This document shows positions 2,729-32,805 of a DNA stretch of 64,000 nt, in pieces. The translations under genes and the position numbers were made by a program. The notes under the pieces were generated by a model that saw nothing but the letters and a program-made list of their open reading frames with translations, was not told the DNA's origin and did no database searches. This stretch comes from Paramoeba atlantica (Eukaryota; Protista; Discosea): positions 1-64,000 of the forward strand of contig CDRNVI010000003.1 in the NCBI GenBank assembly GCA_977017575.1, read 5' to 3'. Numbering within the stretch: the stretch's first letter is position 1; the number at the start of each line of letters is the position of its first letter.

Positions 2729-3795
2729 CACACCCCCGCCAAAAAGTATTGTAATTTATTAGTATCGACCACGAATATTTGGTCGATACTAATAAATACA
2801 ATACTTTTTGTAGATTTTCACGAGTTGCTACTGGCTTCCAAAATCATCATTCCACATGATGTTCTCAGCTCAGTATCTTAGAGTGAGGCCGCCATGAATA
2901 TTGCGATGAGCGGGTTTGAACTCGCCGTCTGAGCACCATGTGCTTCAAACTTTGAATTCTTGCCACTCCGCCACCTGCGATCCCACTCCGCCACCTCCGC
3001 TCCCACTCCGCCACCTCCGCTCACTCCGCCACCTCCGCTCCCAAATCGCTCCGAACCCAATCGCGTAGTGCGAATACAAATTTCTCCAAAGAGGACACGA
3101 GGAATTTCCGTCACATCCCAAGATGCAGTTACTTGACGCGCACGGAGTTCATTCATTGCCTGGATAATAGAAAGTACCTTGTTTTCACGACAAAACACGC
3201 TTCGACACGGCGGTTGCCTTTTTGACAGCAGTATCAATAGAATTACGGGCGAACAGACGAGACACATAGTCATTGTACAGAGCCTTTGCTCTTTGCTTTA
3301 GTCCGGAAATGACAAATTGGTCTGCAGGTTGGTAAACGTGCGTCAGTTTTGGAGCGATAAAGAGAACACCACAATTTTTTTCAGTGAGCCATTCCGTTAT
3401 TTTTGAGTGCTGGGAAGCTTCATCAATGATTAAAAGAGCCTTGGCATTGTATTGATTAGACGACTCTCGGTCATCCTGCAAAATACCTATGAATTTGTCC
3501 ATAAATTCTTTCCACGTTTCCCGGCTTTGAAAGTGCGTATCCTTACGAGAACATTGGAGCACTCGAGGGTCGTCTCCTACGTTAACAAATTTCTTTTGAG
3601 TGCCCTTGTGGATGAATTGCATGAGCTTTACATCACCGGAAGCATTAGTAAGAAGAGTGCAAGTGAACCCCTCACGATCAGAACGTACCGCAACAGTTCG
3701 GTTTTCTCCTTTTTGAATTCTTTCCGAAGTCCATTTCTGAGAAAAAAAAATTTCTGAGAACTACCGTTGTCCGAAAGAGAGAAACAGACTCGATA
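2729..3795 (-). mobile_element. pogo-family DNA transposon, C-terminal half plus terminal inverted repeat
   Basis: ORF 3185-3622 has LLIIDEASQH and IAPKLTHVYQPADQFVISGLKQ (DDE_1-type motifs); TA+CACACCCCCGCCAAAAAGTATTG at 2727-2751 is the inverse of 43891-43913. Confidence 0.85.
2880..3041 (-). mobile_element. 5' fragment of SINE-like element with its 5'-terminal 20 nt reiterated four times
   Basis: Matches the head of the 19015-19410 copy; unit GAGCGGAGGTGGCGGAGTGG occurs four times (2963-3041). Confidence 0.85.
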
Positions 3796-10087: not shown

Positions 10088-13050
10088 AAACTTTCCCTAT
10101 ATTTCTCTGTTCGGGCTGACGCTACAAGAGCTTGGCTTTATTTTCTTAAAGAACAAAATGTATTCTACTCAGATATTCACATATTGGAACAGAGAATAGA
10201 GGATTTGGTGAACGAAAGCAAAAGAATACTTGAAGAAACAACTGTTGTCAACAATGCCATTTCAGTGGCAGCTCCACTATTAGCTCATAAACGAAACGCG
10301 ATAGAAGAAGAAAAGCCGGAGGTAGAAAACGTTTTACTATGTGAACCTCCCCAACGAAATGCTGAGGATGAGATAGTCGAAAGCCTAACAAACCTCATAA
10401 AAGGTAATGACCAAAGAAGGCACCATGCCAGAATTCACGTTACAAGTGCAGCTAACGAGTTTAACGAGAATGACAATATTTTGGGAATGGGGTTTCCAGA
10501 TCTTTTTCCAGTTCTTTCTGAAGCGTCTGCCAATCTCCTAAAGCGCCCCCTTACTCCTGACAGCGGCCTGAAGCATTTGTTGTTGCAAAAAGACCCTCGT
10601 TGGTGCAGAAACGGAAATTTTGGTTTCTTACATTGGGATCAAATCAGGCGCCATTCCTTAGCTCGAAGTGTGAGGGTCAAGCCCAATATGTGGAAAAAAG
10701 CAAAGAAACTTTTGGAAAAAGAAAATATAATTGTGCAGTTGAAGGAGGCACAGAAGGACCCTCAACGAAAGGAAAATCGTAAGCTTCTGTTGGAAGCATG
10801 CAATGTCCTGCATATTGTAACTCGTGATGTTCCATTTTCCGACGCAGCTCGGAATGCGTGCTTTAAACAAATGGTGGCAATTCATGGGTTCATGGGTCAT
10901 CCGACACTCTACGTCACCGTATCCCCATGCGATCCAGATATGAAAATTACCCTGGAATACCTATACGCCTCTTCAAAAAGCGTGCAAGAGGATTTTCTAA
11001 TTGACGATGCGTACCAAAGAGTACAAAAAGTGCGAGATCACCCTGCATATGCAGCGCAAACATTTCATTTAATTATTGATGCGTTGCTTACCACGATATT
11101 TGGTGTAGTCCCGCACAAACGATTTAAAAAATCAGGCCAATCGGTCAGTGCTATTTCAGAAGAAATGCCCGTCGGAATTTTCAAGATTATGAAGGGAATG
11201 TTTGGGGTGTTTGAGACACAAGGTAGAGGAAATTTGCATATGCATATTGTTCTATGGGGCATCCCTCTCGCTGAGTATGCTTCCGAAAAGATTCATATGG
11301 AATCAGAAAGAAACAGTATAAGCCAATTAGTTTCTGATTGGATGACGGTTTCCGTGCCGTGGGATAAAGGAGATACGAGAAGCGTCGGGGGAAGAGTGGG
11401 GTTAGAGGCATTCCCGCCATTCGATAATCAGAAAGCCATGGATATCAGAGAGTATCGAGTTACATCAACTGTGCAACAGCATGTGCATACGGAGAAATGT
11501 TTCAAAAATATAGGTGTAGCGCCAACAAAATGCCGATATGCATACCCACGGCAGGTTACGCCATTGAATGCTTTTTATTATTTAAAACAATCAAGTTCTA
11601 CACCAGGAAAAGTAGTGGCAAAAACAGTTTCAGAAAATATGGCGGCCCGTGCTGAAAGTACAGAGCCCTCTTTCTTTGGTTATATGTATGTCACCCGACT
11701 TTCGTCCTCTATTGTACTTGCCTAAGAGATCATCAAGGGATAAAAATACTGCAGAATACAATTCGATAACGTCCTGCCTCCTGGGATTCAATACAAATGT
11801 TGTTTTTCTCGGATCAGGTTGCATTGCAGCGATAACTACTTTCTATCTTTTTAAATATTTATCCAAAAACTTGCTTGATATCAATACTTGTATTGGGGCA
11901 GTTCAAGCAGCAAAACACAAAGAAAAATACGGAAGCCGAAGATCGCACGAGAATTCATCAGACAAGTTGCTCTGCAATAGGCTTGGAAATAGTCAACTAG
12001 GAATGCAAGAAGTGTCGGCCCAGCTGGCCATGTATTGTTGCCTTGGTTATGAGTCGGAAGAATGCAGCCATATAGTTTCCTACTTGGATGTACGGCAGGC
12101 ATCTAAATTAATGGTCAAAGGCGTTGGAGGAGTACAGGAAGACGGAACAGAGACTGATAGCGAAATATCAGACAATGAAGGCCTCTCTGATGTGATTGGC
12201 GGAGGTGGCGAAGTGGCAAGAATTCAAAGTTTGAAGCACATGGTGCTCAGAAGGCGAGTTCAAACCCGCTCATCGCAATATTCCTGGCGGCCTCACTCTA
12301 AGAGGCTGGGCTGAGAACCGACTAGGCCCAGTACTCGGAGGACCGTCCCGGACCCTCCCCTCAGGGAACCAGCTCCCTTACACGGCTTACACCTCTTGGG
12401 TAAGCCGTGTTGACGTACAGTTCGTCGACGCAGCGTGTTGGCAACAGCACGTTGGTGCCGCCTTGGACAAGAGGAAACTGGTAGAGGACGTCGGCCTCGG
12501 AACTTCCAAATCTGTCTGTGAAGGGTCTGGCTTGCCAGTGACCATCCGGAGCAATCCGGAATGATTTGGATTGGATTTTTTTTTTTGGATTTGGAGGGAA
12601 CCAGCTCCCTTACACGGCCCACACCTCTTGGGTAAGCCGTGTTGACGTACAGTTCGTCGACGCAGCGTGTTGGCAACAGCACGTTGGTGCCGCCTTGGAC
12701 AAGAGGAAACTGGTAGAGGACGTCGGCCTCGGAACTTCCAAATCTGTCTGTGAAGGGTCTGGGCTTGCCAGTGACCATCCGGAGCAATCCGGAGTGATTA
12801 AAAAAAAAAATTAGATGTGATTGTAAGGGATGACGGGTCTACTGAAATGTGCAGTAAGGCTCTGGACTATTACTTTCGAGGCACAGAACTTGAGTTCTTA
12901 AATTTTTACCTTTACGACGCCATTATTGCGAGAGTTCGCATATCATCAGTGAAAATAATTGGTAAAACCAAGAAAGGGAGATCAAGAAACACTACATTCG
13001 CATTCAAGAAAGGACATCCGCTGATTGAAACTTTTACTCAGCGAATTTCT
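10088..13050 (+). pseudogene. Helitron Rep (HUH endonuclease) region, disrupted
   Basis: GHPTLYVTVSP, FETQGRGNLHMHIVLWG, QQHVHTEKC...CRYAYP, YNSITSCLLGFNTNVVFLGSG...YLFKYLSK, DYYFRG...HPL; frameshift near 11720 and a SINE dimer inserted at 12199. Confidence 0.9.
12199..12813 (+). mobile_element. Head-to-tail dimer of SINE-like element (full copy + 5'-truncated copy) with poly(A) and 10-bp TSD
   Basis: GATGTGATTG at 12189-12198 and 12814-12823 flanks the insert; A run at the 3' end; the Helitron reading resumes after it. Confidence 0.9.
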
Positions 13051-16704: not shown

Positions 16705-17095
16705 CAAATTCAAATCATTCCGGATTGCTCCGGATGGTCACTGGCAAGCCAGACCCTTCACAGACAGATTTGGAAGTTCCGAGGCAAACGTCCTCTACAA
16801 GTTTCCGCTTTTCCAAGGCGGCACCAACGTGCTGTTGCCAACACGCTGCGTCGACGAACTGTACGTCAACACGGCTTACCCAAGAGCAAGCCGGGTAAGG
16901 GAGCTGGTTCCCTGAGGGGAGGGTCCGGGACGGTCCTCCGAGTACTGGGCCTAGTCGGTTATCAGCCCAGCCTCTTAGAGTGAGGCCGCCGGGAATATTG
17001 CGATGAGCGGGTTTGAACTCGCCGTCTGAGCACCATGTGCTTCAAACTTTGTGTTCTTGCCACTCCTCCACTCCTCCACACTCCGCCACTCCTCA
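16705..17095 (-). mobile_element. SINE-like element copy with internal deletion
   Basis: Near-identical blocks to 19015-19410; partly reiterated 5' head at 17060-17095. Confidence 0.85.
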
Positions 17096-17472
17096 ACATG
17101 TTTAGGCACCAGGAAGCTACTACTTATGAAGAATGGAAATCAAAAGGCTTAACAGAAACAGCGCAAGATGTTGCAGAAGCTACTGGGTGTTTAGGAAAAA
17201 GAAGCTGCGGATGGAATTCAGGAAGCGAACGATCTCCTTGCACAACATCAAGCAAATTCGAAGAAAGGAAAGAAAAGAAACGTTGAAACTGAACTTTTCT
17301 TGGTTGGTTCAAGTAGAAAGGCTTTTGAAAGATACATGGACATCGGATCAGAGAACATACATACATACATAAACATTGGCAGATAATACATTATTGTCTA
17401 CCAATTGGTAAACTCTCTATTCTCCCCAAAAAGTCACTATACTTTCACTTAAACTCAAGGACCCTTTCACAA

Positions 17473-18087: not shown

Positions 18088-18129
18088 TGATTATATATAT
18101 AAAGATACAGTTTCTGTACCTTGTTGGTA
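18088..18129 (+). ncRNA. Spliced-leader (mini-exon)-like sequence, 5' end non-canonical; SL RNA pseudogene or retrocopied SL
   Basis: TATATAAAGATACAGTTTCTGTACCTTGTTG|GTA: exact kinetoplastid/diplonemid SL core ACAGTTTCTGTAC plus TTG|GTA at the canonical spacing; the usual AAC(T/C)AAC start is absent. Confidence 0.6.
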
Positions 18130-21230: not shown

Positions 21231-21450
21231 TTGCCTTGCGCCTCCACCTTCCTCTATGGCCTTGCGTGTCACACACTTCCAGGTAAAGTTTGGCCTTTGT
21301 AGGTGTATTTGCGGAATATCGAGGGGAGGACCGTCCCGGACCCTCCCCTCAGGGAACCAGCTCCCTTACCCGGCTTACACCTCTTGGGTGAGCCGTGTTG
21401 ACGTGAATTCGTCGACGCAGCGTGTTCGCAACAGCACGTTGGTGCCGCCT

Positions 21451-21562
21451 TGATTTCTTCCTATTAAGTTGATTTCTTCCTATTAAGTTGATTTCTTCCT
21501 ATTAAGTTGATTTATTCCTATTAAGTTGATTTCTTCCTATTAAGTTGATTTCTTCCTATTAA
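21451..21562 (+). repeat. Tandem array of 6 x 19-bp unit (GTTGATTTCTTCCTATTAA) at the 5' end of family-F LINE
   Basis: Six units readable, one with a substitution; directly precedes the AEASGPF-type N-terminus. Confidence 0.92.
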
Positions 21563-23156
21563 TGAATATTTCTAGGGAGAAGGCGGAGGCGTCCGGACCT
21601 TTTGCCAGCTTGCTCTCGTTCAAAGAGAAGTTACGGAAGGCCACGTGTCAACGGGGAAACCTCTTTCTGCCTCCTCAGCGGAGAGAGGGAGTAGCGATAC
21701 TCCGGCAGCGGGCCCTGTGTCGAATGCAGTCACTTGTATGGTTCCGGGGAAGAGGTTCGTTATAACCTGGTGCAAGTCATATGAATATAGTACGAGGGTG
21801 TGGGAAGGTTCTGTTGTGTCGGTTGAACCGGACGGTTTTCAAATGGAAAACAGGGCCGTGGGCAGGTAAACATCAAAGGGTTACTTCCTCCAAGGAGGAA
21901 CAATTCGTAGAAGAGGGCGATGTGACGTTCAAAATTCGTGCAAATGAAATGCATTTATATACTGACGGGGCATTGTCTACAAAGAAAAATCAAATAGCAA
22001 CGGGATGTGCGTATGTATCGTTACGAGTTGGGAATCAAAAACTTATGGTAGGGATGCGCCCACCGGAAGATGTACCGCTTACCATTATGGCAGCTGAGGC
22101 GTATGGGGCATTTGCAGCATTGCAATTCACAATGGAATTTAATGGGGATGTTGTGTTGCATACTGATTCTCATAACCTCTGGGAATTTTTCCATATACAT
22201 AGGCATCAAAATCGCTTAGTTGGATTTCAGAAATTTGAGAATTCGGAACTGCTGAGACAGATTAGCCAGGCTTGTCATAAAATTGAGACTGATGCTAGAA
22301 ATGTGTACTGTATTAAAGTTCGAGCTCACGAAGGAAACCCATATAATGAGAGTGCTGATTTGGTGGCAAAAAAGGCAATTGATACAGTTGATATTGGCTC
22401 ATCATTTACTTATCGAGAACCCAAGGAGGTATCGAACGGTAAAAGAAAAGTTCCGAATTGTCCGGACAGAACGGTGCAAATACAGGAGAAAGTTTTAAAA
22501 TCGAATAGTATTTCTAGAAAATCACCCAAAACACCTATGAAAAAAGTCGTAATTACGGAACAAAAAAGGTCCAGAGAAAAGGAAGCTGAGCTGGGAAACA
22601 TTAAGGAACCTAAACTCAAGAAACGAAACAAGGCCTCTGAAGATAATTCACGTTCTGATAAGAAAATTATTCCAAAGGTTAAACTGCCACGGCATCCACA
22701 AATTAAACGAAAAGCCAACGAAGGCAAAAGCCAATCGCAGGCAGATGAGGAAGATAAATTGTCGAACTAACAGAATTTCTCGGTTGTGGGGTGAACGAGG
22801 GGTGGACAAGATTTTTGAAACAGTATTATTATTTATTTATATTTCAATCTAAAAGGTGTGAAACGAATCGACCTAGGTTTCCTGCTTATATGCGTTAATT
22901 TATTATATTTGTTAGTCTGTTTGTATTTGTATTTCATTTGTTGTCAAATTTGGAGGGAGAGGCATTGTTTGTAGAATTAGTTGAGTTTGTAGGTGCAAAG
23001 TTCACCGACGCATGCTAGGAAACGTGCTGCGTAGCCATTTTGATGGATTTACGGTACTTAAACAGGGCAAGTATCCCTTCACTTAATTGGAAACGGGGGG
23101 GGGGCAACTAGAGAGTGAAAGAGTACAAAGACCTCAACTGATATATCAGTGTTGTT
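21453..23156 (+). mobile_element. Internally deleted family-F LINE (array + N-domain fused to RNase H C-terminus + 3' UTR + (GTT)n tail), 15-bp TSD
   Basis: KAEASGPFASLL...AILRQRAL; ORF 21781-22770 has HLYTDGA, AAEAYG, LHTDSH, KVRAHEGNPYNESADLVA; flanking 15-bp direct repeat. Confidence 0.88.
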
Positions 23157-23283
23157 GTTGGTGCCGCCTTGGGAAAGCGGAAACTGGTATAGGACGTCGG
23201 CCTCGGAACCTCCAAATCTGTCTGTGAAGGGTCTGGCTTGCCAGTGACCATCCGGAGCAATCCGGAGTGATTTGGATTGTTTT

Positions 23284-23437
23284 GGGACGAGGGAGATACC
23301 AACAGTGTAGATGCGGCAGTTTCCTCAGGAAAAACGGCATCTCTGCCTTTTTAGGCGCCTGTCTTCATGCCCTAAGGGAGATAACGTTTTTCCTGTGGAA
23401 ACTGCCGGACCTATACTGTTGGTATCTTCCTCGTCCC
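23284..23437. repeat. Imperfect ~150-bp foldback containing GAGGGAGATAC
   Basis: GGGACGAGGGAGATACCAACAG pairs with CTGTTGGTATCTTCCTCGTCCC; inner CGGCAGTTTCC.CAGGAAAAACG pairs with CGTTTTTCCTG.GGAAACTGCCG. Confidence 0.8.
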
Positions 23438-24239: not shown

Positions 24240-25150
24240 TAATTGCGGTGGTTGTAAAACTACCGCTCTACACTCGATTATTGAAAAAAAAGTGAACAAA
24301 AACAGTGAAAATATTAAGAGGAACACAGTAATATAATAGAAGAAAAAAATATAAAAGGGGGCTCCGGTGATCCAAAACTGAAAAAAAAAATTGAAAAAAA
24401 TGGGGGGTCCATGGGGGAGGTCCAGGGGGGTCCAGGGGGGGTCCAGGGGGGGGTCCAGGGGGGGGGTCATGGTCGAGCAAATTTTTTCGAAAAAATTAGT
24501 TTTCGAAACCAAACCGCAGAAAGGGTAGCCGGGGTCTTGGCGCGCATTTTCCACCCCCCTACCCGGGGGTAACCCCCCTGCGTATCCGCAGGAGGGGTCC
24601 GCCGAGTTCGAAATTGTTCGGATTTTTTTTTTGAAAACAATTTCAACTTGGCGAAAAAAATGACCAAAAAAATATTTTTCCAAAATCGTTTCCCCTATTG
24701 TATTTTGATAGTTTGGGACCTACAATAGCTTTCTCCGCAGTTGCTTTCGCAAGGTGTCCCTTCTTCGAACCGTGGTGCGCCCCTCAAAATAACCCATTTT
24801 TTGACTAAAAAAGGTGAAAAAGTATTTTTCGGACCTAAAGGGGCATTTGTGTGTCGAAAGAATGGTATGGTTGGAGTCGTCTTCTCTACCCAATACGTTC
24901 GGTAGGCTTCCATTCATGCCTACTAGTGATTTTCCACGCGCAAATGTCGGATTTAGTGCTCTGAGAGCAGAAATACGCGAAAATCACCCGATTTGTACCC
25001 GAAATTCGGCTATTTTTGGCTATAATCTTTCCGTTTTCCAGGCTAAATTTTCTTTTTTAGGCTACTCGTTAAACGCGGCGGTAGTTTTCAACGCGAAGCG
25101 CGCAGCATGAGTGACTTCTAAGTTGAAAACAACCACCGTGTTTAACGTTT
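24240..25150. repeat. Full-length hairpin-ended dispersed repeat (Helentron/HINE-like non-autonomous element)
   Basis: Begins ATTGCGGTGGTTGTAAAACTACCGC, has a variable GGTCCAGGGGGG tract, ends in a long GTTAAACGCGG...CCGTGTTTAAC palindrome. Confidence 0.85.
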
Positions 25151-25793
25151 AATGGCAATTAATAAATGGGCGGAGGCGTCCGGACCTTTTGGGGGTTTCT
25201 TGGCGGTCAAAGAAAAACTCCGATTGGCCACGTGTTGTCGGGGAAACCTGTTTCTACCTAAAAAGCGGAAATGGGGAGTAGCCAAACTCCGGCCGCGGGA
25301 CCTGTTTCGAATGTCATGTCTTTTTTCTCCTGGAAAACGCTTTGCTGTTGCCTGGAGTATGTCATATGATTTACGTACGAGGTTGTCGGAGGGGACTGCT
25401 AAATCTATACTTCCGGACGGTAGACGTCTAGTGAAGTATGATTTAGTGGATGATCGCCTTTTCCTGTTTCCTCCGAAAGATGAACGAGTTCAAATTCTGG
25501 GTGGTAGGGTAGGTTTCTTGGGAAAATGGAAATCCAAACGGAATAGGAAACGCACCAACTGTCCTCGAAGTGGCTACCGGGGCCAGGGATCCGAGAAGAA
25601 TGCTAAGAGAGGGGGTTTTACGATAAATACCCTAAACGTGGACACCTTGAAAGTCAAAGCGACTGATACTTTCACGCTTCGGAAGTCGATTAGACTATAT
25701 CAAGTGGCAGGTTTCATGAGGAGTCAACATGTTGACCTCATGGCGCTTCAGGAAACAAGGTTAAAATTTGATGATAAGGATTCTATTTTACAT

Positions 25794-27358
25794 ACCACTT
25801 TTTGTTTTAAGACCACTTTTTGTTTTAAGACCACTTTTTGTTTTAAGACCACTTTTTGTTTTAAGACCACTTTTTGTTTTAAGACCACTTTTTGTTTTAA
25901 GACCACTTTTTGTTTTAAGACCACTTTTTGTTTTAAGACCACTTTTTGTTTTAAGACCACTTTTTGTTTTAAGACCACTTTTTGTTTTAAGACCACTTTT
26001 TGTTTTAAGACCACTTTTTGTTTTAAGACCACTTTTTGTTTTAAGACCACTTTTTGTTTTAAGACCACTTTTTGTTTTAAGACCACTTTTTGTTTTAAGA
26101 CCACTTTTTGTTTTAAGACCACTTTTTGTTTTAAGACCACTTTTTGTTTTAAGACCACTTTTTGTTTTAAGACCACTTTTTGTTTTAAGACCACTTTTTG
26201 TTTTAAGACCACTTTTTGTTTTAAGACCACTTTTTGTTTTAAGACCACTTTTTGTTTTAAGACCACTTTTTGTTTTAAGACCACTTTTTGTTTTAAGACC
26301 ACTTTTTGTTTTAAGACCACTTTTTGTTTTAAGACCACTTTTTGTTTTAAGACCACTTTTTGTTTTAAGACCACTTTTTGTTTTAAGACCACTTTTTGTT
26401 TTAAGACCACTTTTTGTTTTAAGACCACTTTTTGTTTTAAGACCACTTTTTGTTTTAAGACCACTTTTTGTTTTAAGACCACTTTTTGTTTTAAGACCAC
26501 TTTTTGTTTTAAGACCACTTTTTGTTTTAAGACCACTTTTTGTTTTAAGACCACTTTTTGTTTTAAGACCACTTTTTGTTTTAAGACCACTTTTTGTTTT
26601 AAGACCACTTTTTGTTTTAAGACCACTTTTTGTTTTAAGACCACTTTTTGTTTTAAGACCACTTTTTGTTTTAAGACCACTTTTTGTTTTAAGACCACTT
26701 TTTGTTTTAAGACCACTTTTTGTTTTAAGACCACTTTTTGTTTTAAGACCACTTTTTGTTTTAAGACCACTTTTTGTTTTAAGACCACTTTTTGTTTTAA
26801 GACCACTTTTTGTTTTAAGACCACTTTTTGTTTTAAGACCACTTTTTGTTTTAAGACCACTTTTTGTTTTAAGACCACTTTTTGTTTTAAGACCACTTTT
26901 TGTTTTAAGACCACTTTTTGTTTTAAGACCACTTTTTGTTTTAAGACCACTTTTTGTTTTAAGACCACTTTTTGTTTTAAGACCACTTTTTGTTTTAAGA
27001 CCACTTTTTGTTTTAAGACCACTTTTTGTTTTAAGACCACTTTTTGTTTTAAGACCACTTTTTGTTTTAAGACCACTTTTTGTTTTAAGACCACTTTTTG
27101 TTTTAAGACCACTTTTTGTTTTAAGACCACTTTTTGTTTTAAGACCACTTTTTGTTTTAAGACCACTTTTTGTTTTAAGACCACTTTTTGTTTTAAGACC
27201 ACTTTTTGTTTTAAGACCACTTTTTGTTTTAAGACCACTTTTTGTTTTAAGACCACTTTTTGTTTTAAGACCACTTTTTGTTTTAAGACCACTTTTTGTT
27301 TTAAGACCACTTTTTGTTTTAAGACCACTTTTTGTTTTAAGACCACTTTTTGTTTTAA
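25794..27358 (+). repeat. Homogeneous tandem array of ~87 x 18-bp unit (GACCACTTTTTGTTTTAA) at the 5' end of the intact family-B LINE
   Basis: No variant unit seen over ~1565 bp; ends 16 nt before the ATG at 27375. Confidence 0.97.
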
Positions 27359-27374
27359 TTTACTTTAGAACAAA

Positions 27375-30300
27375 ATGGCGGATGCTTCCGGCACGCATGG
27401 GGGGACAGAGGTTTTTGAAACCCTTATGCGGACCAAGCGTGGTCGGGGGGTAGTCTTTCGTTCGCCTGAACGAGAGGGTCCTGCTAAACTCCGCCAGAGG
27501 GCGGTCCGGTCGCTTTGTAAATTTATACGTGTTGGGGCTTTTATCCGTGTTGCATGGAGGTATGAAACCTCTTCTGAAGTCTTTATTTGGGATGGTGAAG
27601 TTGTGGGTGGGGTGCCGGCGAGTCTACAAAATTTCGACTGGGCAAATACAAGTCCTATTTGGCACAATCACTTATCTGGTGCATTTCGTGTTCGATACGC
27701 AAAAAGGCCGAACACAACCTTACCCTTCCCCCCTTATTCGCAAACTGGCGTAGTGCTTTGTGCAACGCAGGTGAGGAACCCGGCGCGGGCAAAATGGAAG
27801 AGCAATCGGCACCGCCCTCGACCACAATGGGCGTCGACTGGCAAACACGCCCAACAAGATTCGGAGAACCACAAAGGTTCCGCTGAGAAGGAGAGTACGA
27901 CCGTCGCCACACTAAACGTTACAACGTTAAAGCTAGAAGGGGAAGATGAATTTGCACTTCGAAGATGCGCCCGTCTGAATGAGGTGCTTGCCTTCATGCA
28001 CGAAAAGGGGGTTGGCGTCATGTGCCTTCAGGAGACCAGGCACAAATTCTTGAAGGGGAACCATGAGGATGGAATCCTCTACAGAAAGGTTGAAAACCTA
28101 GGGGAGTGTTTTCACATATATCTGCAGTCGGCCGACGAACGTGATTCTTATAACGGCATGGCAATAATTAGTAGATGGCCGTTTCAAAAAGTCTGGATGG
28201 TTAGCAAAAGGGTCATGGGAGCGGAGTATCCCCTGGAAGATGGGAAGGGCACACTGTTTAATGTCTATTCCCCAACGCGGGACTCCTTAGAAGCCGTTCA
28301 TGCGGCATTTCTGGGGGACTTGGGCAAGGCTTGTCGCGAGGTCAAGGCTCACGAGAGGCGTCGGCCTTTATTGGTAATGGGTGATTTCAATGCACCACTA
28401 ACGCTGGTAACAAATCCAACCATGGATCCTCCAGCGATCTCTCAGCTTAAAGGCCTACTATGCTCTATTGGATGCAAGTCGGCACATACTCTCTGCCCGA
28501 GTAAAAGAAAATGGACATGCGAGTTGCCGGGCAAGAGGAAGGGGAACTTAGACAATCGCGGGAATCGAACGGAAAGAAAATTAGGGAAAATGAACGGAGA
28601 TACGCAAACATGTGAAACGCAAGGTTTGGATCTACAAGCAGATGCCATAGGACAAGAGAGCATTTTGAAGAGGGATAGGGATAATGAGGGGGTAGGGGGG
28701 AAAATTTCTAGGAGCCAGGAAGATAAAAGAAACAAGATGGGAAAACACAAGAAGGATGACAACAAGGTGCGGAGACAGCTTGATCATATACTGGTTTGCG
28801 AAAGGTTTTCCTCTAGCATTGGGCGTCACAAAGTCTTAAAGGCGCCTGTTCCTACGGTACATTGTGTCGTGATGGCGGATGTAAAAATTAAGTGGCGTTC
28901 TAAACGACCAAGCGGGCAGAGCAGAGTGCCATGGGCCAGGCTAGGGGACGAGGAGAGGAAGGCTTCCTTCCAAAACTCAGTTTGGGACGAGGTTAAAAGA
29001 GAAGGAGAGATTACATGGGAAAATTTATCAGAAACAATGGTTCACACTGCAGAAAAACTATCGAGAAAAGGAGCAGCGACACCGCAAGCGCAATTAATGG
29101 CAGAAACACCGATGAAAATTAATACGGAAACAAAATCGTCTCAAATTTCAGGATTTCGCGACTTGTTTCTGCAAAGCAGAAAACCAGACCACTTCAAAGA
29201 AGTTCTAAAAGAGCACGGAACAGAAATTGAGGCACAAATCCAAAAAGAATGTTCCGAGATTGAATCTGGTTTAAGGAAACATCGGTCTAATCCGTGGCGC
29301 ACGCTGCGGAGGATTTGCGGTTTATACAGGGACACCTTTCGCATAGAGACCTCATCGACGAGAGAGACACTTCATATTGTGAAGGATTTCTTTGCTCGTA
29401 TGGGCTCCGATGATCGTGGAGATAAGAACATTGCCTTCGAAGCGGTGACCTCCATTAAAATACCGATAAATGATGATATCTTTTCCATGGAAGAGCTAGA
29501 AGATGGAATAAGCCGGCTCGCACGCAACAAAGCGCCTGGAATAGACCAAATCCCTGCAGAAGTACTTTCGATTATCACGGAACACAAGGATCTGAGAAAC
29601 GTACTGTTAAATATCATCAATGAAGTTCACCGTTCAGGGGTTTCGCCTGCGTCCTGGAAATTTGTCCTTCAGGTTCCTATTCCTAAAAAAGGCGACCTGA
29701 CACAAATTTCGAACTGGCGCCCAATCTGCCTCGTCAATAGCGCGGTAAAATTAATGAACGCAATGATTCTTCGAAGAATGAGACCAGCCATTGAACCGTT
29801 TCTAAGGGATAGTCAATTCGGATTTCGCCCGGAAAGGTCCACAGCAGGAGCGCAGATAATACTTAATGATGTGAAGATAAGGTCGTCGCGCAACAAGAGG
29901 GGGGTCGCAGTTGCATTCATGGATTTTGCCAAAGCCTTTCCTTCGGTATCTTTTTATGCAATCCGTGCTGCTCTTAAAGCTTTTCACGTCGGATCAGCGC
30001 TCACTAGTATGATAATGTCAGTGTATTCCAATCTAAGAGGCATAGTCAAAACACCGTACGGCAATACGGAATCTTTCCCCATTGAAACAGGAATTCTCCA
30101 GGGAGATGTTCTTGCTCCTTATTTGTTTGTGCTTGTTATTGACAGAATTCTTCATAAAGCGCTCGATAACAAACCTCTAGGGATTCTGTTGAGGAGCAGC
30201 GGGACAAAAAGTAGGGGAATTCAAGAATTTCGAGTGAAGGACATTGATTACGCAGACGATATTGCTCTTCTGGCGGAGACAAAACATGAAATATCCGAAA

Positions 30301-31976
30301 TGATAGAAGCTACGGCTAATGAAGCAAAATCTGCCAATCTAAGGGTTGCTGTGGGAAAAAATAAGACTGCGTGGATGGCCTTCGGGAAGGTTCCGGGGGG
30401 AACAAGAGAACTTCGGGCGGGATCACTGGGAAAGATTCCTCTCGTGGATTCCTACCGACATCTTGGTCACCTTCAAGATGTTACGGCAGCATCCCCCATC
30501 AAAGATCGACTGAGATTAACATGGGCAGCTTTTCGCAAGCTTAATGGAATCTGGGCCTCACCACTGAGTGCTGCTACGAAATTGCGCCTATTTGATTGCC
30601 TAGTCTATCCAATATTGACGTTTGGTGCTGCATCTCTTTATCTTTCTAACAAAATGCTTCGGCAAACGGAAGTGGAGGTAAACATAATGAGGCGATTTGC
30701 TTGCAACTCGGCTAAACTTGATGATTTCGGCCACTGTTACCCGCTAGAGGCGCTGTATCTCGGTACACCTCGCTTTGCGACTGTTCATCGCGTTGCCCGA
30801 GCTAAACTTGTTGGCCACATGCTGAGGCACTCGACCACTTTTCGCGAGCTTGTTCAATGGAATACTAAAGAAAGAGCACGAAGTATTTCCCCCAGCGAGG
30901 CAAGTTTTAACGATCTAGGTATTACGCTTGAACAAGCTCTTGTTTACTCCCAGGATCGAGAACACTGGCAAAAGCTTTGCGACAATCTCCGACAAAAACT
31001 TGAGCCTCTTCCGGAGTACGAAGTATTACGGTCTTCGAAATGGAAAACCAAATATGGTCAAGCACTGAAAAGCAATAGCTCTTATGAATTTCAATTTGTG
31101 GAAGAAGGTCCAGAACCGTTTCCTATGTTTACAGGAGAAGTTCACATGTATATTGATGGCTCTGTTCGACAGATGCGAGGGTCAACGGAACACATGGCAG
31201 GTGCAGGAGTAGTTTTACGAATGAACGGCATGGAAGATGAATATTACTCTATAGCATTAGACGCCGAAACAGCTGATAGAGCTGAGATTGAAGCAATGAT
31301 AGAAGCGCTGGACAGAACACCAGACAAGGCGGAAACAGTTGTTGTCCACACGGATTCATTCTATGTATGGAATTTCTTCCATCTTACACGTTTGCGAAGG
31401 AGAATCATCGGGTACAACAACATACCGAACGGCAAAATCCTTGAAAAACTGGATAAGGAAATCCGAACGCTTCAATCCAGAGGCACAAGGTGTTACGTGT
31501 GCAAAGTTAGATCCCACAATGGGAACAAGCACAACGAGAAGGCAGACACATTGGCGATTGCAGGGTCACGCAAGATTGCTCCAAACCCAGAAACCAAGAG
31601 GAGAAAGACATTGACAAATGCTCAGGCTCAGAAAGGGGAGAGTAGGGGGAGGGTTAGTTCAAAAACTATTCAGACTATGAATCGTCCTCGAAAAAATTGT
31701 AGCCAAATTCCTAAGCCATTAGGTAAGAGACGAGATTACTTCAAGACTGTGGTAGGTGATCCCCTCCCCAAAAAGGGTACCTCGCCTCCTGTAGATGCCG
31801 GAATGAATTCTACCGGGGAGAATGAATGCTTGCCTGAAGAACCTGACTCCGAAAATAAAAACTTGCACGAAGGACGTTCCACGCCCGGTTCAAAGGCCAA
31901 GGAGCATAAAAGTGCAGGTTCACCGGATAGTAAGACGTTGAAACGCAAAAATGACAGATGTACTCTTAACCGATGA
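27375..31976 (+). CDS. Intact 1533-aa non-LTR retrotransposon polyprotein: N-terminal domain, APE endonuclease, RT, RNase H, basic tail
   Basis: LNVTTL/LQETR/NVYSPT/MGDFNAP/LDHIL (APE); WRPICLVN, QFGFRPERST, DFAKAFPSV, GILQGDVLAPYLF, DYADDI (RT); YIDGS, RAEIEA, HTDS, KVRSHNGNKHNEKADTLA (RNase H); (ATTGG)n tail at ~31988-32008. Confidence 0.97.
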   Translation: MADASGTHGGTEVFETLMRTKRGRGVVFRSPEREGPAKLRQRAVRSLCKFIRVGAFIRVAWRYETSSEVFIWDGEVVGGVPASLQNFDWANTSPIWHNHLSGAFRVRYAKRPNTTLPFPPYSQTGVVLCATQVRNPARAKWKSNRHRPRPQWASTGKHAQQDSENHKGSAEKESTTVATLNVTTLKLEGEDEFALRRCARLNEVLAFMHEKGVGVMCLQETRHKFLKGNHEDGILYRKVENLGECFHIYLQSADERDSYNGMAIISRWPFQKVWMVSKRVMGAEYPLEDGKGTLFNVYSPTRDSLEAVHAAFLGDLGKACREVKAHERRRPLLVMGDFNAPLTLVTNPTMDPPAISQLKGLLCSIGCKSAHTLCPSKRKWTCELPGKRKGNLDNRGNRTERKLGKMNGDTQTCETQGLDLQADAIGQESILKRDRDNEGVGGKISRSQEDKRNKMGKHKKDDNKVRRQLDHILVCERFSSSIGRHKVLKAPVPTVHCVVMADVKIKWRSKRPSGQSRVPWARLGDEERKASFQNSVWDEVKREGEITWENLSETMVHTAEKLSRKGAATPQAQLMAETPMKINTETKSSQISGFRDLFLQSRKPDHFKEVLKEHGTEIEAQIQKECSEIESGLRKHRSNPWRTLRRICGLYRDTFRIETSSTRETLHIVKDFFARMGSDDRGDKNIAFEAVTSIKIPINDDIFSMEELEDGISRLARNKAPGIDQIPAEVLSIITEHKDLRNVLLNIINEVHRSGVSPASWKFVLQVPIPKKGDLTQISNWRPICLVNSAVKLMNAMILRRMRPAIEPFLRDSQFGFRPERSTAGAQIILNDVKIRSSRNKRGVAVAFMDFAKAFPSVSFYAIRAALKAFHVGSALTSMIMSVYSNLRGIVKTPYGNTESFPIETGILQGDVLAPYLFVLVIDRILHKALDNKPLGILLRSSGTKSRGIQEFRVKDIDYADDIALLAETKHEISEMIEATANEAKSANLRVAVGKNKTAWMAFGKVPGGTRELRAGSLGKIPLVDSYRHLGHLQDVTAASPIKDRLRLTWAAFRKLNGIWASPLSAATKLRLFDCLVYPILTFGAASLYLSNKMLRQTEVEVNIMRRFACNSAKLDDFGHCYPLEALYLGTPRFATVHRVARAKLVGHMLRHSTTFRELVQWNTKERARSISPSEASFNDLGITLEQALVYSQDREHWQKLCDNLRQKLEPLPEYEVLRSSKWKTKYGQALKSNSSYEFQFVEEGPEPFPMFTGEVHMYIDGSVRQMRGSTEHMAGAGVVLRMNGMEDEYYSIALDAETADRAEIEAMIEALDRTPDKAETVVVHTDSFYVWNFFHLTRLRRRIIGYNNIPNGKILEKLDKEIRTLQSRGTRCYVCKVRSHNGNKHNEKADTLAIAGSRKIAPNPETKRRKTLTNAQAQKGESRGRVSSKTIQTMNRPRKNCSQIPKPLGKRRDYFKTVVGDPLPKKGTSPPVDAGMNSTGENECLPEEPDSENKNLHEGRSTPGSKAKEHKSAGSPDSKTLKRKNDRCTLNR

Positions 31977-32624
31977 AAATCGGTCTTATTGGATTGGATT
32001 GGATTTGGAATCTCACTTCACCTCTACCTGATGAGTGCAATCAACGGGTACAATGGCATGGCATTTTTGAGCACTAAACCTCTATCTGTTCAGAAGATTA
32101 GCGATCGCATTATGAGTGGACACTTCATTCTAGGTGAAACGAAAGCCTGCATTTACAACGTCTATTCACCTACAGCGAAAGCTAGCAAATCGACGCAACA
32201 AAGTTTTGACGAAGACTTATTCGATGCACGGTATGACGATGATAGTATGGTAAGAATCATTAGTGGAGATCTAAATTCGTCGCTACTCAACCCAGGGGGG
32301 AGAAAATGTTAAACAAAGCGTGCAAAACAGTTACGAAAGCTACCATGCTCGCTTGGAGCTCAATCTGTACATGAAGGCTGTTGTGCAAGAAGAAAATGGA
32401 CGTATAGGTTTCCTAAAACGCGTCGGTATCCAGAGGGAATGACCAAGCAACTTGACCACATCGTTGTTAACAAAAGGTTTTTCTCTTCTATACGACCCAC
32501 GAAATGCCACATCGCACCAATACCTACGAGACATTGTGCTTTGACATCGAACTTCAATTTTCGATGGAAAATTCAAAAACTGTCTCAACAAAAACCTTTT
32601 TGGGAGGCATTGAAAAATGATGAA

Positions 32625-32805
32625 AATCACCCGATTTGTACCCGAAATTCGGCTATTTTTGGCTATAATCTTTCCGTTTTCCAGGCTAAATTTTCTTTTT
32701 TAGGCTCTTCGTTAAACGCGGCGGTAGTTTTCAACGCGAAGCGCGCAGCATGAGTGACTTCTAAGTTGAAAACAACCACCGCGTTTAACGAAGAGCCTAA
32801 AAAAG
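32625..32805. repeat. Partial hairpin-ended dispersed repeat (long terminal palindrome end)
   Basis: AGGCTCTTCGTTAAACGCGG...CCGCGTTTAACGAAGAGCCT. Confidence 0.85.

What the first reader, a model, noticed from the sequence alone, without database searches (positions are those of the whole stretch)
21438..23171. A 19-bp x6 array lies inside a 15-bp target-site duplication
Seen: a SINE copy is split by a 1.7-kb family-F element flanked by GTTGGTGCCGCCTTG on both sides. The six 19-bp units are the first bases inside the left TSD, and a (GTT)n tail is the last sequence inside the right TSD. This is the cleanest evidence that the array is laid down during target-primed insertion and is not a pre-existing target. 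The 19-nt unit also shows there is no codon constraint.
Basis: seen in the sequence. Interest (0 to 1): 0.8.

Follow-up and report, generated by a model that had tools for sequence, protein, structure and literature searches.

The report
Jumping gene with six repeated heads
A shortened jumping gene (LINE) landed inside another repeat and brought six tandem copies of its own first 19 letters; each copy begins a predicted self-cutting RNA fold, so the repeats came with the element, not from the landing site.

Summary
GTTGGTGCCGCCTTG flanks a 1,704-bp insert (window 21453-23156). Four uninterrupted copies of the host repeat carry that 15-mer once, so it is a true target-site duplication. Its outer 3 bp on each side are shared with the element's ends.

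The insert is a non-autonomous, internally deleted copy of an APE/RT/RNase H LINE in a kinetoplastid-like genome. It has 5.9 units of 19 bp at its 5' end and a (GTT)n tail.

- **The array belongs to the element.** The only other independent family-F insertion (contigs C54 and C45) has the same unit, about 51 and about 735 times.
- **Each unit is a predicted RNA head.** It starts with G and a strand (GUUGAU) that pairs with GUCAAC about 100 nt downstream. This lies in a covariation-supported, HDV-ribozyme-like double pseudoknot shared by nine related families.
- **Each unit is therefore a potential RNA 5' end.** Most likely an RNA with six heads was copied whole.

DNA-level length change is documented.

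This scan already reported ribozyme-head arrays elsewhere in this genome (s1-369992, s1-369784, s1-396094, s1-386227). This locus adds a clean empty-site control. I found no description of such arrays in the literature I searched.

The parts
21320..21452 (+).
   Evidence: Aligns to intact copies up to and including the 15-mer (alignment A1)
21438..21452 (+). Left copy of the target-site duplication GTTGGTGCCGCCTTG. Its last 3 nt (TTG) equal nt 2-4 of the array unit.
21450..21562 (+). 5' head array of 5.9 x 19 bp. In the frame set by the last unit the unit reads GTTGATTTCTTCCTATTAA, with G1 at 21468, 21487, 21506, 21525 and 21544. The first unit (from 21449) has C in place of G1. The unit starting at 21506 has one C>A change.
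   Evidence: TRF; unit list
21544..21706 (+). Predicted HDV-ribozyme-like nested double pseudoknot:
- P1 21544-21549 with 21647-21652
- J1/2 hairpin arms 21550-21556 with 21575-21581
- P2 21584-21588 with 21700-21704
- P3 21589-21592 with 21643-21646
- P1.1 CC 21593-21594 with GG 21653-21654
- hairpin inside L3 21595-21642
- P4 21660-21670 with 21678-21688
- invariant C in J4/2 at 21695
   Evidence: P1 covariation across 10 sequences from 9 families (script). P2, P3, L3 stem, P1.1 and P4 counted on alignment A2. Coordinates. Nested helices also appear in the MFE fold.
21562..21765 (+). Short ORF (67 aa), the N-terminal remnant of the LINE ORF. Its ATG overlaps the last base of the last unit.
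   Evidence: homologous to the start of the long LINE ORFs
21838..21839 (+). Internal deletion junction. Bases on either side are 8.7 kb apart in the C54/C45 copy (APE and the RT region are missing here). No GT-AG and no microhomology.
21781..22770 (+). ORF of 329 aa holding a complete RNase H domain and a basic tail. It is the only recognisable domain in this copy.
   Evidence: Pfam PF00075, E 4.9e-14
22771..23156 (+). 3' untranslated region ending in the palindrome CTGATATATCAG (23138-23149) and a (GTT)2 tail (23151-23156)
   Evidence: The C54/C45 copy ends in the same sequence with (GTT)5.
23157..23171 (+). Right copy of the target-site duplication. Its first 3 nt (GTT) continue the tail repeat.
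23157..23290 (+). Right part of the split short interspersed repeat
   Evidence: alignment A1

Best explanation
The insert is a non-autonomous, internally deleted copy (comparable to RIME or NARTc) of an ingi/L1Tc-like LINE, family F. It keeps the 5' head, a complete RNase H domain, the 3' UTR and the (GTT)n tail, but has no endonuclease or reverse transcriptase. It must therefore have been copied in trans by target-primed reverse transcription.

Inferred steps at the target:
- The bottom strand was nicked at the left edge of the 15-mer, and its ...CAAC-3' end paired with the GUU-repeat tail of the RNA.
- The top strand was cut 15 bp downstream, and its ...CTTG-3' end paired with the cDNA copy of the RNA's first bases, (G)UUG.
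- Repair produced the duplication.

The six 19-nt units are tandem copies of the element's own first 19 nt. Each begins with G and the 6-nt strand that forms helix P1 of a conserved double-pseudoknot fold of the HDV-ribozyme type, which overlaps the start codon. Each unit is thus a spare RNA 5' end: a predicted self-cleavage site, or a defined start.

Most likely the source element carried a long array, like the C54/C45 locus. Its transcript was ended at the sixth unit from the body, and the whole RNA with six heads was reverse-transcribed. Arrays then grow and shrink at the DNA level.

Shown here: the duplication, the empty site, that the unit belongs to the element, copy-number variation, the internal deletion, and covariation of the fold. 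Inferred: self-cleavage, which unit set the RNA end, and copying in trans.
For: - **Duplication and empty site:**
- **Coding content:** the only domain is RNase H. Segments 1-386, 387-670 and 667-1704 of the insert are 8.7 and 4.7 kb apart in the C54/C45 copy. That copy retains APE-like and RNase H-like coding sequence. The 4.7-kb block there holds a foreign RT_RNaseH ORF, so it is a nested insertion.
- **Same unit at the other locus:** about 51 units on C54 and about 735 on C45. The two share 5' flank (98% over 960 bp), 3' flank and nested inserts.
- **Related families have the same layout:** families in the window and genome (B, C, A, D, G, H, I, J) have 18-nt head arrays followed by an APE-RT-RNase H ORF.
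- **P1:** in all 10 sequences the first 5-8 nt of the unit pair with the bases just before an invariant GGGG. There are 3-4 pair types per column, 97% of cells are paired against 23-47% when slid, and cross-family pairing fails.
- **Rest of the fold:** P2, P3, L3 stem, P1.1 and P4 give 93.6% paired cells against 39-55% when slid. Six pairs change on both sides, and 0 of 500 shuffles reach the covariation score. An invariant C followed by N-A-A/U-A precedes the 3' strand of P2.
- **Distal junctions:** 11 of 17 independent arrays start at unit nt 1-3, including this one (scored by eye; binomial P about 1e-5).
- **Precedent:** L1Tc and ingi elements have an HDV-like ribozyme and promoter in their first 77 nt that cleaves 5' of +1 (PMC3185411, PMC4035085).
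Against: - No Rfam ribozyme model matches.
- The predicted fold has two large insertions, a hairpin in J1/2 and one inside L3. The L3 insertion is, to my knowledge, atypical for HDV-like ribozymes. Cleavage is untested.
- Only two independent family-F insertions exist in this 45.7-Mb assembly, so parent-daughter comparison of arrays is impossible for F.
- The distal unit of the C54/C45 array starts at nt 10, not at G1.
- Near-identical sibling copies of family J have either 2 or fewer units, or more than 83. Long arrays are nearly perfect. Both facts fit synthesis at insertion at least as well.
- The 51 versus 735 difference could partly be assembly collapse.
Confidence: 0.55

Rival explanations
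1. Reiterative reverse transcription at insertion. The RNA carries one or few heads. On reaching the 5' end, the reverse transcriptase repeatedly re-copies the terminal 18-19 nt, so the array is built during this insertion. It could do this by realigning the cDNA end, by end-to-end template jumps onto a released 18-19-nt terminal RNA fragment, or on a circularised fragment.
For: - Unit boundaries lie exactly at the RNA's first nucleotide in every family.
- Family J siblings at 99-100% identity have <1, <1, <1, 1, 2 or >83 units, with nothing between.
- Arrays of 83-87 units are 93-100% identical: B 86.9 units at 100% matches by TRF, and J-family arrays with 83/83, 82/83 and 77/83 consensus units.
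- Distal blocks of units carry one extra A exactly at the unit joint, in F (C54) and in I (L075).
- Flank-plus-unit-start duplications occur at two 5' junctions, L023 and L027.
- The short interspersed repeat also shows reiteration of its first 20 nt.
- The unit length is about the polymerase-to-RNase H spacing of retroviral RTs (my own knowledge, untested here).
Against: - Nothing at this locus distinguishes it from copying a six-head RNA.
- There is no homology between the cDNA end and position 19-24 to guide a first jump.
- Long arrays exist in potential source loci.
- DNA-level change of array length is documented.
- AA>AAA is a common slippage mutation.
- Blocks of variant units, rather than scattered ones, suggest amplification of variants.
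Confidence: 0.27
2. Post-insertion minisatellite expansion. The element inserted with one or two heads, and the six units arose later by replication slippage or unequal exchange at this locus.
For: The same ancestral insertion has about 51 versus about 735 units on C54 and C45. Higher-order repeats of variant units occur in the C54 array.
Against: - The first unit abuts the duplication in the G1 phase.
- Five of the six units are identical to the proximal units of C54.
- Expansion cannot start from a single unit.
- Young family J copies with 1-2 units have not expanded.
Confidence: 0.12
3. The array is a pre-existing satellite or target into which the element inserted.
For: None beyond the general fact that some LINEs target simple repeats.
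Against: Four intact copies of the host repeat have no such array at this site. The array lies inside the duplication. The unit occurs only with family F elements.
Confidence: 0.01
4. The units work as promoter monomers or as trans-splice acceptor sites (pyrimidine tract + AG), not as ribozyme heads. The pairing with the downstream strand serves another purpose.
For: - Every unit has a T-rich tract followed by AAG.
- The genome has a kinetoplastid-type spliced-leader-like motif.
- Pr77 of L1Tc is also an internal promoter (PMC1874656, PMC4748587).
- Mouse L1 promoters are monomer arrays (my own knowledge).
Against: - A trans-spliced RNA would carry a spliced leader at the 5' end of new copies. 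This copy starts directly with a unit.
- P1 covariation with a single downstream strand, and the full double-pseudoknot topology, are not explained by a promoter or acceptor role.
- The two roles are not mutually exclusive.
Confidence: 0.1

Closest known systems
L1Tc / ingi LINEs of trypanosomatids, with the Pr77 hallmark and the L1TcRz HDV-like ribozyme
   Same: - APE-RT-RNase H in one long ORF (seen in family B of the window).
- A conserved structured 5' end that overlaps the start of the element and sets the RNA 5' end at +1.
- Target-site duplications.
- Kinetoplastid-like host.
   Different: - Here the first 18-19 nt (P1 strand plus one hairpin arm) are multiplied 1 to more than 700 times.
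- The fold is about 163 nt, with hairpins inserted in J1/2 and L3, against 77 nt.
- The tail is (GTT)n or (ATTGG)n, not poly(A).
- RT phylogeny and Pr77 sequence similarity were not tested.
RIME / NARTc / SIDE (short internally deleted derivatives of ingi and L1Tc)
   Same: The window copy keeps the 5' head and the 3' end of its LINE, lacks RT, and was mobilised with a proper duplication.
   Different: It retains a whole RNase H domain (1.7 kb). Only one such copy was found, so it is not an amplified family.
R2 and other LINEs with 5' HDV-like ribozymes
   Same: A ribozyme at the 5' end releases the element RNA from longer transcripts. Cleavage is 5' of the first nucleotide of P1.
   Different: As far as I know and as far as my searches reached, those have a single head and no tandem multiplication of the P1 strand.
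Mouse L1 5' monomer arrays
   Same: A variable number of tandem units forms the 5' end of a LINE and travels with it.
   Different: Mouse monomers are about 200-bp promoter units. Here the units are 18-19 nt and are phased on an RNA fold.
Telomerase-type reiterative copying, and template jumping of LINE reverse transcriptases
   Same: Would give phased, homogeneous short-unit arrays at a cDNA end (rival mechanism).
   Different: No evidence here for a dedicated template or for reiteration at this insertion.

Membership tests
Non-LTR retrotransposon inserted by target-primed reverse transcription | Target-site duplication flanking the whole insert, with an empty site in paralogous copies | tested here: met
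   15-bp duplication; four intact copies have the 15-mer once
Non-LTR retrotransposon inserted by target-primed reverse transcription | 3' end with a simple-repeat or A-rich tail, and no terminal repeats | tested here: met
   (GTT)n tail after a palindrome. The C54/C45 copy has the same end.
Non-LTR retrotransposon inserted by target-primed reverse transcription | Family encodes APE endonuclease and reverse transcriptase | tested here: inconclusive
   This copy has only RNase H. The C54/C45 copy has APE-like and RNase H-like parts but the RT region is replaced. Sister families B and C in the window have APE+RT+RNase H. No intact F copy was found.
ingi / L1Tc clade | APE-RT-RNase H order in one ORF | tested here: met
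   Family B ORF of 1533 aa: Exo_endo_phos 194-346, RVT_1 769-999, RNase_H 1255-1397. For F this is only inferred through homology.
ingi / L1Tc clade | RT groups with ingi/L1Tc in a phylogeny | not tested
   No named reference sequences were returned, and none could be fetched.
ingi / L1Tc clade | Pr77 hallmark sequence at the 5' end | not tested
   No Pr77 reference sequence was available from a tool. Only the functional analogy was examined.
ingi / L1Tc clade | Poly(A) tail | tested here: not met
   The tail is (GTT)n in F and (ATTGG)n in B. INGI elements are described with poly(A) (PMC12278014).
HDV-like self-cleaving ribozyme | Nested double pseudoknot P1-P2-P3-P1.1-P4 in the canonical order | tested here: met
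   Order P1, J1/2, P2, P3, L3 (CC), P3', P1', GG, P4, J4/2, P2'. Covariation in P1, P2, P3 and P4.
HDV-like self-cleaving ribozyme | Conserved C in J4/2 just before the 3' strand of P2 | tested here: met
   C is invariant in all 10 sequences, followed by N-A-A/U-A. Window position 21695.
HDV-like self-cleaving ribozyme | Short L3 loop and a compact core matched by the family's covariance models | tested here: not met
   L3 carries a hairpin of about 45 nt. No Rfam hit even at E up to 10.
HDV-like self-cleaving ribozyme | Self-cleavage 5' of +1, giving a 5'-OH | not testable with these tools
   Needs in vitro transcription and end mapping.
SIDE-type non-autonomous derivative (RIME/NARTc-like) | Both ends of the parent LINE retained, internal coding region deleted, mobilised in trans | tested here: met
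   deletion; duplication

The most novel reading that the evidence does not exclude
The reverse transcriptase of these RNase H-bearing LINEs builds the head array itself. After reaching the ribozyme-defined 5' end, it repeatedly re-copies the terminal 18-19 nt, producing from a few to hundreds of heads in a single insertion. The template could be a released or circularised terminal RNA fragment whose length is set by ribozyme cuts or by the polymerase-to-RNase H distance. This would be a telomerase-like way for a LINE to renew and buffer its own 5' end.
Probability: 0.25. Interest if true: 0.85.

Novelty: new variant of a known kind. Interest (0 to 1): 0.6.

Why it matters
LINEs lose their 5' ends at almost every insertion, and how they keep a working 5' end is a long-standing question. 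These elements carry tandem spare copies of the first strand of a ribozyme-like head, so a copy truncated by a few bases still has intact heads further in.

This locus gives the cleanest proof, with empty-site controls, that the heads travel with the element. It also shows that a deleted, RT-less derivative is mobilised with them. The system could test directly whether a LINE reverse transcriptase can reiterate its template end, and whether one ribozyme core can use any of many upstream P1 strands.

I found no description of such arrays in the papers I could search.

Tried and rejected
- **Splicing as the cause of the internal deletions:** rejected. Junction 1 has no GT-AG and no microhomology. 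Junction 2 is a 4.7-kb nested insertion in the C54/C45 copy holding an RT_RNaseH ORF.
- **Independent 5'-truncated F copies, to see whether they lack arrays:** the candidate at C45:322002 shares the 3' flank of the C54/C45 insertion, so it is a segmental duplicate. The C32 fragment shares the window's right junction. No independent truncated copy exists.
- **Rfam ribozyme models:** no match.
- **tRNA origin of the host repeat:** ARAGORN finds nothing, so I make no such claim.
- **MAFFT alignment A2:** it misaligns the unit heads, so P1 was tested with my own anchored script instead of the counting tool.
- **An early P1 guess (GAUUUCU/AGAAGUU):** dropped once the G1 frame and cross-family covariation pointed to GUUGAU/GUCAAC.
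- **Naming the LINE clade or the organism from protein hits:** the relatives are unnamed metagenome proteins.
- **Literature:** searches found the L1Tc/R2 ribozyme work but nothing on tandem head arrays.

Full report
**1.
The 15-mer GTTGGTGCCGCCTTG occurs at window 21438-21452 and 23157-23171, and four more times in the window, always inside copies of one short interspersed repeat.
- Reading those copies shows one 15-mer per copy. The pair at 12451 and 12683 belongs to two adjacent copies, the second 5'-truncated.
- In alignment A1 the left half of the split copy ends, and the right half resumes, on the same 15 columns. It is therefore a real target-site duplication around a 1,704-bp insert (21453-23156).
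- TRF gives 5.9 copies of a 19-bp unit at 21450-21562, with 97% matches.
- The last TTG of the left duplication is also nt 2-4 of the first unit. The GTT that opens the right duplication continues the (GTT)2 tail. The unambiguous duplicated core is therefore 9 bp, with 3 bp of microhomology at each junction. That is what annealing of the nicked target ends to the RNA tail and to the cDNA end would leave.

**2. What the insert is.**
Its only recognisable domain is a complete RNase H (Pfam). A search of the window's own assembly (45.7 Mb, 248 contigs) finds the family at one other locus, present on contigs C54 and C45.
- There, bases 1-386, 387-670 and 667-1704 of the insert lie 8.7 kb and 4.7 kb apart.
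- The junctions are not introns.
- The C54/C45 copy has APE-like coding sequence beyond the first junction, so the window copy is an internal-deletion derivative.
- The 4.7-kb block is a foreign nested element with an RT_RNaseH ORF.
- The window copy is thus an RT-less derivative, comparable to RIME or NARTc, that still acquired a proper duplication. I infer it was mobilised in trans.
- Sister families in the window have the full APE-RT-RNase H ORF (1533 aa in family B).
- The host looks kinetoplastid-like. A motif ACAGTTTCTGTAC at 18108-18120 resembles the spliced leader, and the SSU rRNA genes are about 2.1 kb. This agrees with earlier scan notes but was only partly checked.

**3. The array belongs to the element and varies in length.**
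The same 19-bp unit heads the C54/C45 copy, about 51 units on C54 and about 14 kb (about 735 units) on C45.
- The two contigs share the 5' flank (98% over 960 bp), the 3' flank and the nested inserts. They descend from one insertion as haplotypes or a segmental duplication.
- Array length has therefore changed more than ten-fold at the DNA level, unless one assembly is collapsed.
- The C54 array has perfect 19-mers next to the body and 20-mers with an extra A distally, with higher-order repeats between.
- The apparent truncated copy at C45:322002 shares the same 3' flank and is not independent. Only two independent family-F insertions exist in this assembly.

**4. The same layout recurs in related families.**
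In the window:
- Family B has 86.9 perfect 18-bp units before its ORF.
- Family C has 20 and 96 units.

Elsewhere in the genome, families A, D, G, H, I and J have 18-nt units. Eight family J copies with 99-100% identical bodies carry <1, <1, <1, 1, 2, >83, >83 and >83 units.

**5. Each unit is the head of a conserved RNA fold.**
In the frame set by the last, body-adjacent unit, every unit starts with G.
- **P1:** in all 10 sequences tested, the first 5-8 nt are complementary to the bases just before an invariant GGGG about 100 nt downstream.

| Family | Unit head / partner strand |
|---|---|
| F | GUUGAU / GUCAAC |
| A | GAUAACA / UGUUGUC |
| H | GACAACAC / GUGUUGUC |
| D | GCUUG / CAAGC |
| B, J | GACCAC / GUGGUC |
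| I | GAUCAC / GUGGUC |
| G | GAGAAC / GUUCUC |
| C | GACCU / AGGUC |

  Heads do not pair with the partner strands of unrelated families, and sliding the partner destroys pairing.
- **Rest of the fold:** it follows the HDV-ribozyme order.
  - P2 is CGGAG/CUCCG, with CGAAG/CUUCG in family G.
  - P3 is 4 bp whose third pair is G-C, U-A or C-G.
  - CC directly after P3 can pair with the GG after P1 (P1.1).
  - P4 is a hairpin with compensatory changes.
  - An invariant C followed by N-A-A/U-A lies before the 3' strand of P2.
- **Counting tool:** on alignment A2 these helices give 93.6% paired cells against 39-55% when slid. Six pairs change on both sides, and no shuffle of 500 reaches the covariation score.
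- **Context of the cleavage site:** the base before each G1 is A, which cannot extend P1 onto the GG. Such extension is known to reduce cleavage in L1Tc and R2 (PMC3185411).
- **Departures from the family:** a hairpin in J1/2, made from the unit's T-rich arm and the bases before the ATG; a hairpin of about 45 nt inside L3; and no Rfam hit.
- I therefore call it HDV-like in topology, with cleavage unproven. In the window copy the fold spans 21544-21706.

**6. Where arrays begin.**
Eleven of 17 independent distal junctions, scored by eye, start at unit nt 1-3, including this one. Under random phase the binomial P is about 1e-5. The RNA end is usually at a unit boundary whatever the number of units.

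**7. Mechanism.**
- *Shown:* the array came in with the element, and it is not a target.
- *Most likely (about 0.55):* a source with a long array produced an RNA whose 5' end was set at the sixth unit, and that RNA was copied whole.
These are the all-or-nothing unit counts among family J siblings, near-perfect long arrays, extra-A joints in distal blocks, flank-plus-unit duplications at two junctions, and 5' reiteration in the host repeat itself.
- *Later expansion at this locus:* about 0.12.
- None of these is excluded by this locus alone.

**8. Comparison with known systems, and novelty.**
L1Tc and ingi elements have a 77-nt 5' hallmark that is both promoter and HDV-like ribozyme (PMC3185411, PMC4035085, PMC4748587). 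R2 has a 5' ribozyme. Mouse L1 has monomer arrays. I found no report of tandem multiplication of a ribozyme's 5' strand.

The scan has already reported the phenomenon on other DNA of this genome (s1-369992, s1-369784, s1-396094, s1-386227). I re-derived the fold independently for family F.

This locus adds four things:
- the empty-site control;
- an intermediate copy number;
- a deleted derivative mobilised with its heads;
- the C54/C45 comparison.

**9. Limits.**
The LINE clade and the organism are not established by phylogeny.

Noticed in passing
G000 C32:9270-9380 (-), loci L037/L040: A copy of the host repeat with a full 5' head. It contains the last ~85 bp of family F (with a 12-bp gap), then the identical junction GTTGTTGTT|GGTGCCGCCTTG and the same right-half substitutions as window 23157-23195. 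It looks like a chimeric retrocopy made by template switching on a read-through transcript of the window locus.
   Followed up: partly
G000 C45:250315-264325 versus C54:157000-157980: One ancestral family-F insertion has about 735 units on one contig and about 51 on the other. This is minisatellite-like instability or assembly collapse.
   Followed up: partly
window 2963-3043 (-) and 17060-17098 (-): The short interspersed repeat itself shows reiteration of its first ~20 nt (GAGCGGAGGTGGCGGAGTGG x4 in one copy, irregular 8-10-nt repeats in another). Other copies have one head.
   Followed up: partly
window 31990-32010 and repeat 3' ends (e.g. 12570-12590): Family B ends in a hairpin plus an (ATTGG)n tail. 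The short interspersed repeat ends in GATTTGGATT(GGATT). It probably borrows a B-like LINE for its movement.
   Followed up: no
loci L023 (C17) and L027/L028 (C86, C40): At two 5' junctions the flank is duplicated together with the start of a unit. In L023, AGAAAGGCCCAAGAGAG+TGTAAAT is then repeated. In L027, TATATGTCGATAG occurs about 3.6 times before GATAAC. These are possible traces of template switching at the 5' junction.
   Followed up: partly
locus L075 (C44) and C54 array: Distal units carry one extra A exactly at the unit joint (23 of 34 units in L075; the distal ~14 in C54). Proximal units are canonical.
   Followed up: partly
window 18108-18120: The motif ACAGTTTCTGTAC resembles the 3' half of kinetoplastid spliced leaders. 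SSU rRNA genes in the assembly are about 2.1 kb long.
   Followed up: partly
window 25040-25150 and 32640-32790: A foldback element of MITE type (…CGTTAAACGCGGCGGTAGTTTTCAAC…GTTGAAAACAACCACCG…) sits directly at the 5' end of the family A copy at 25160 and again inside it. The same arrangement occurs on C30 (L029).
   Followed up: no
window 25160-25793 and 32011-32620: The family A LINE is split in its endonuclease domain by the family B element (array 25794-27358, ORF 27375-31976). This is a second nested case where a head array arrived with its element, though no clear duplication is visible.
   Followed up: partly
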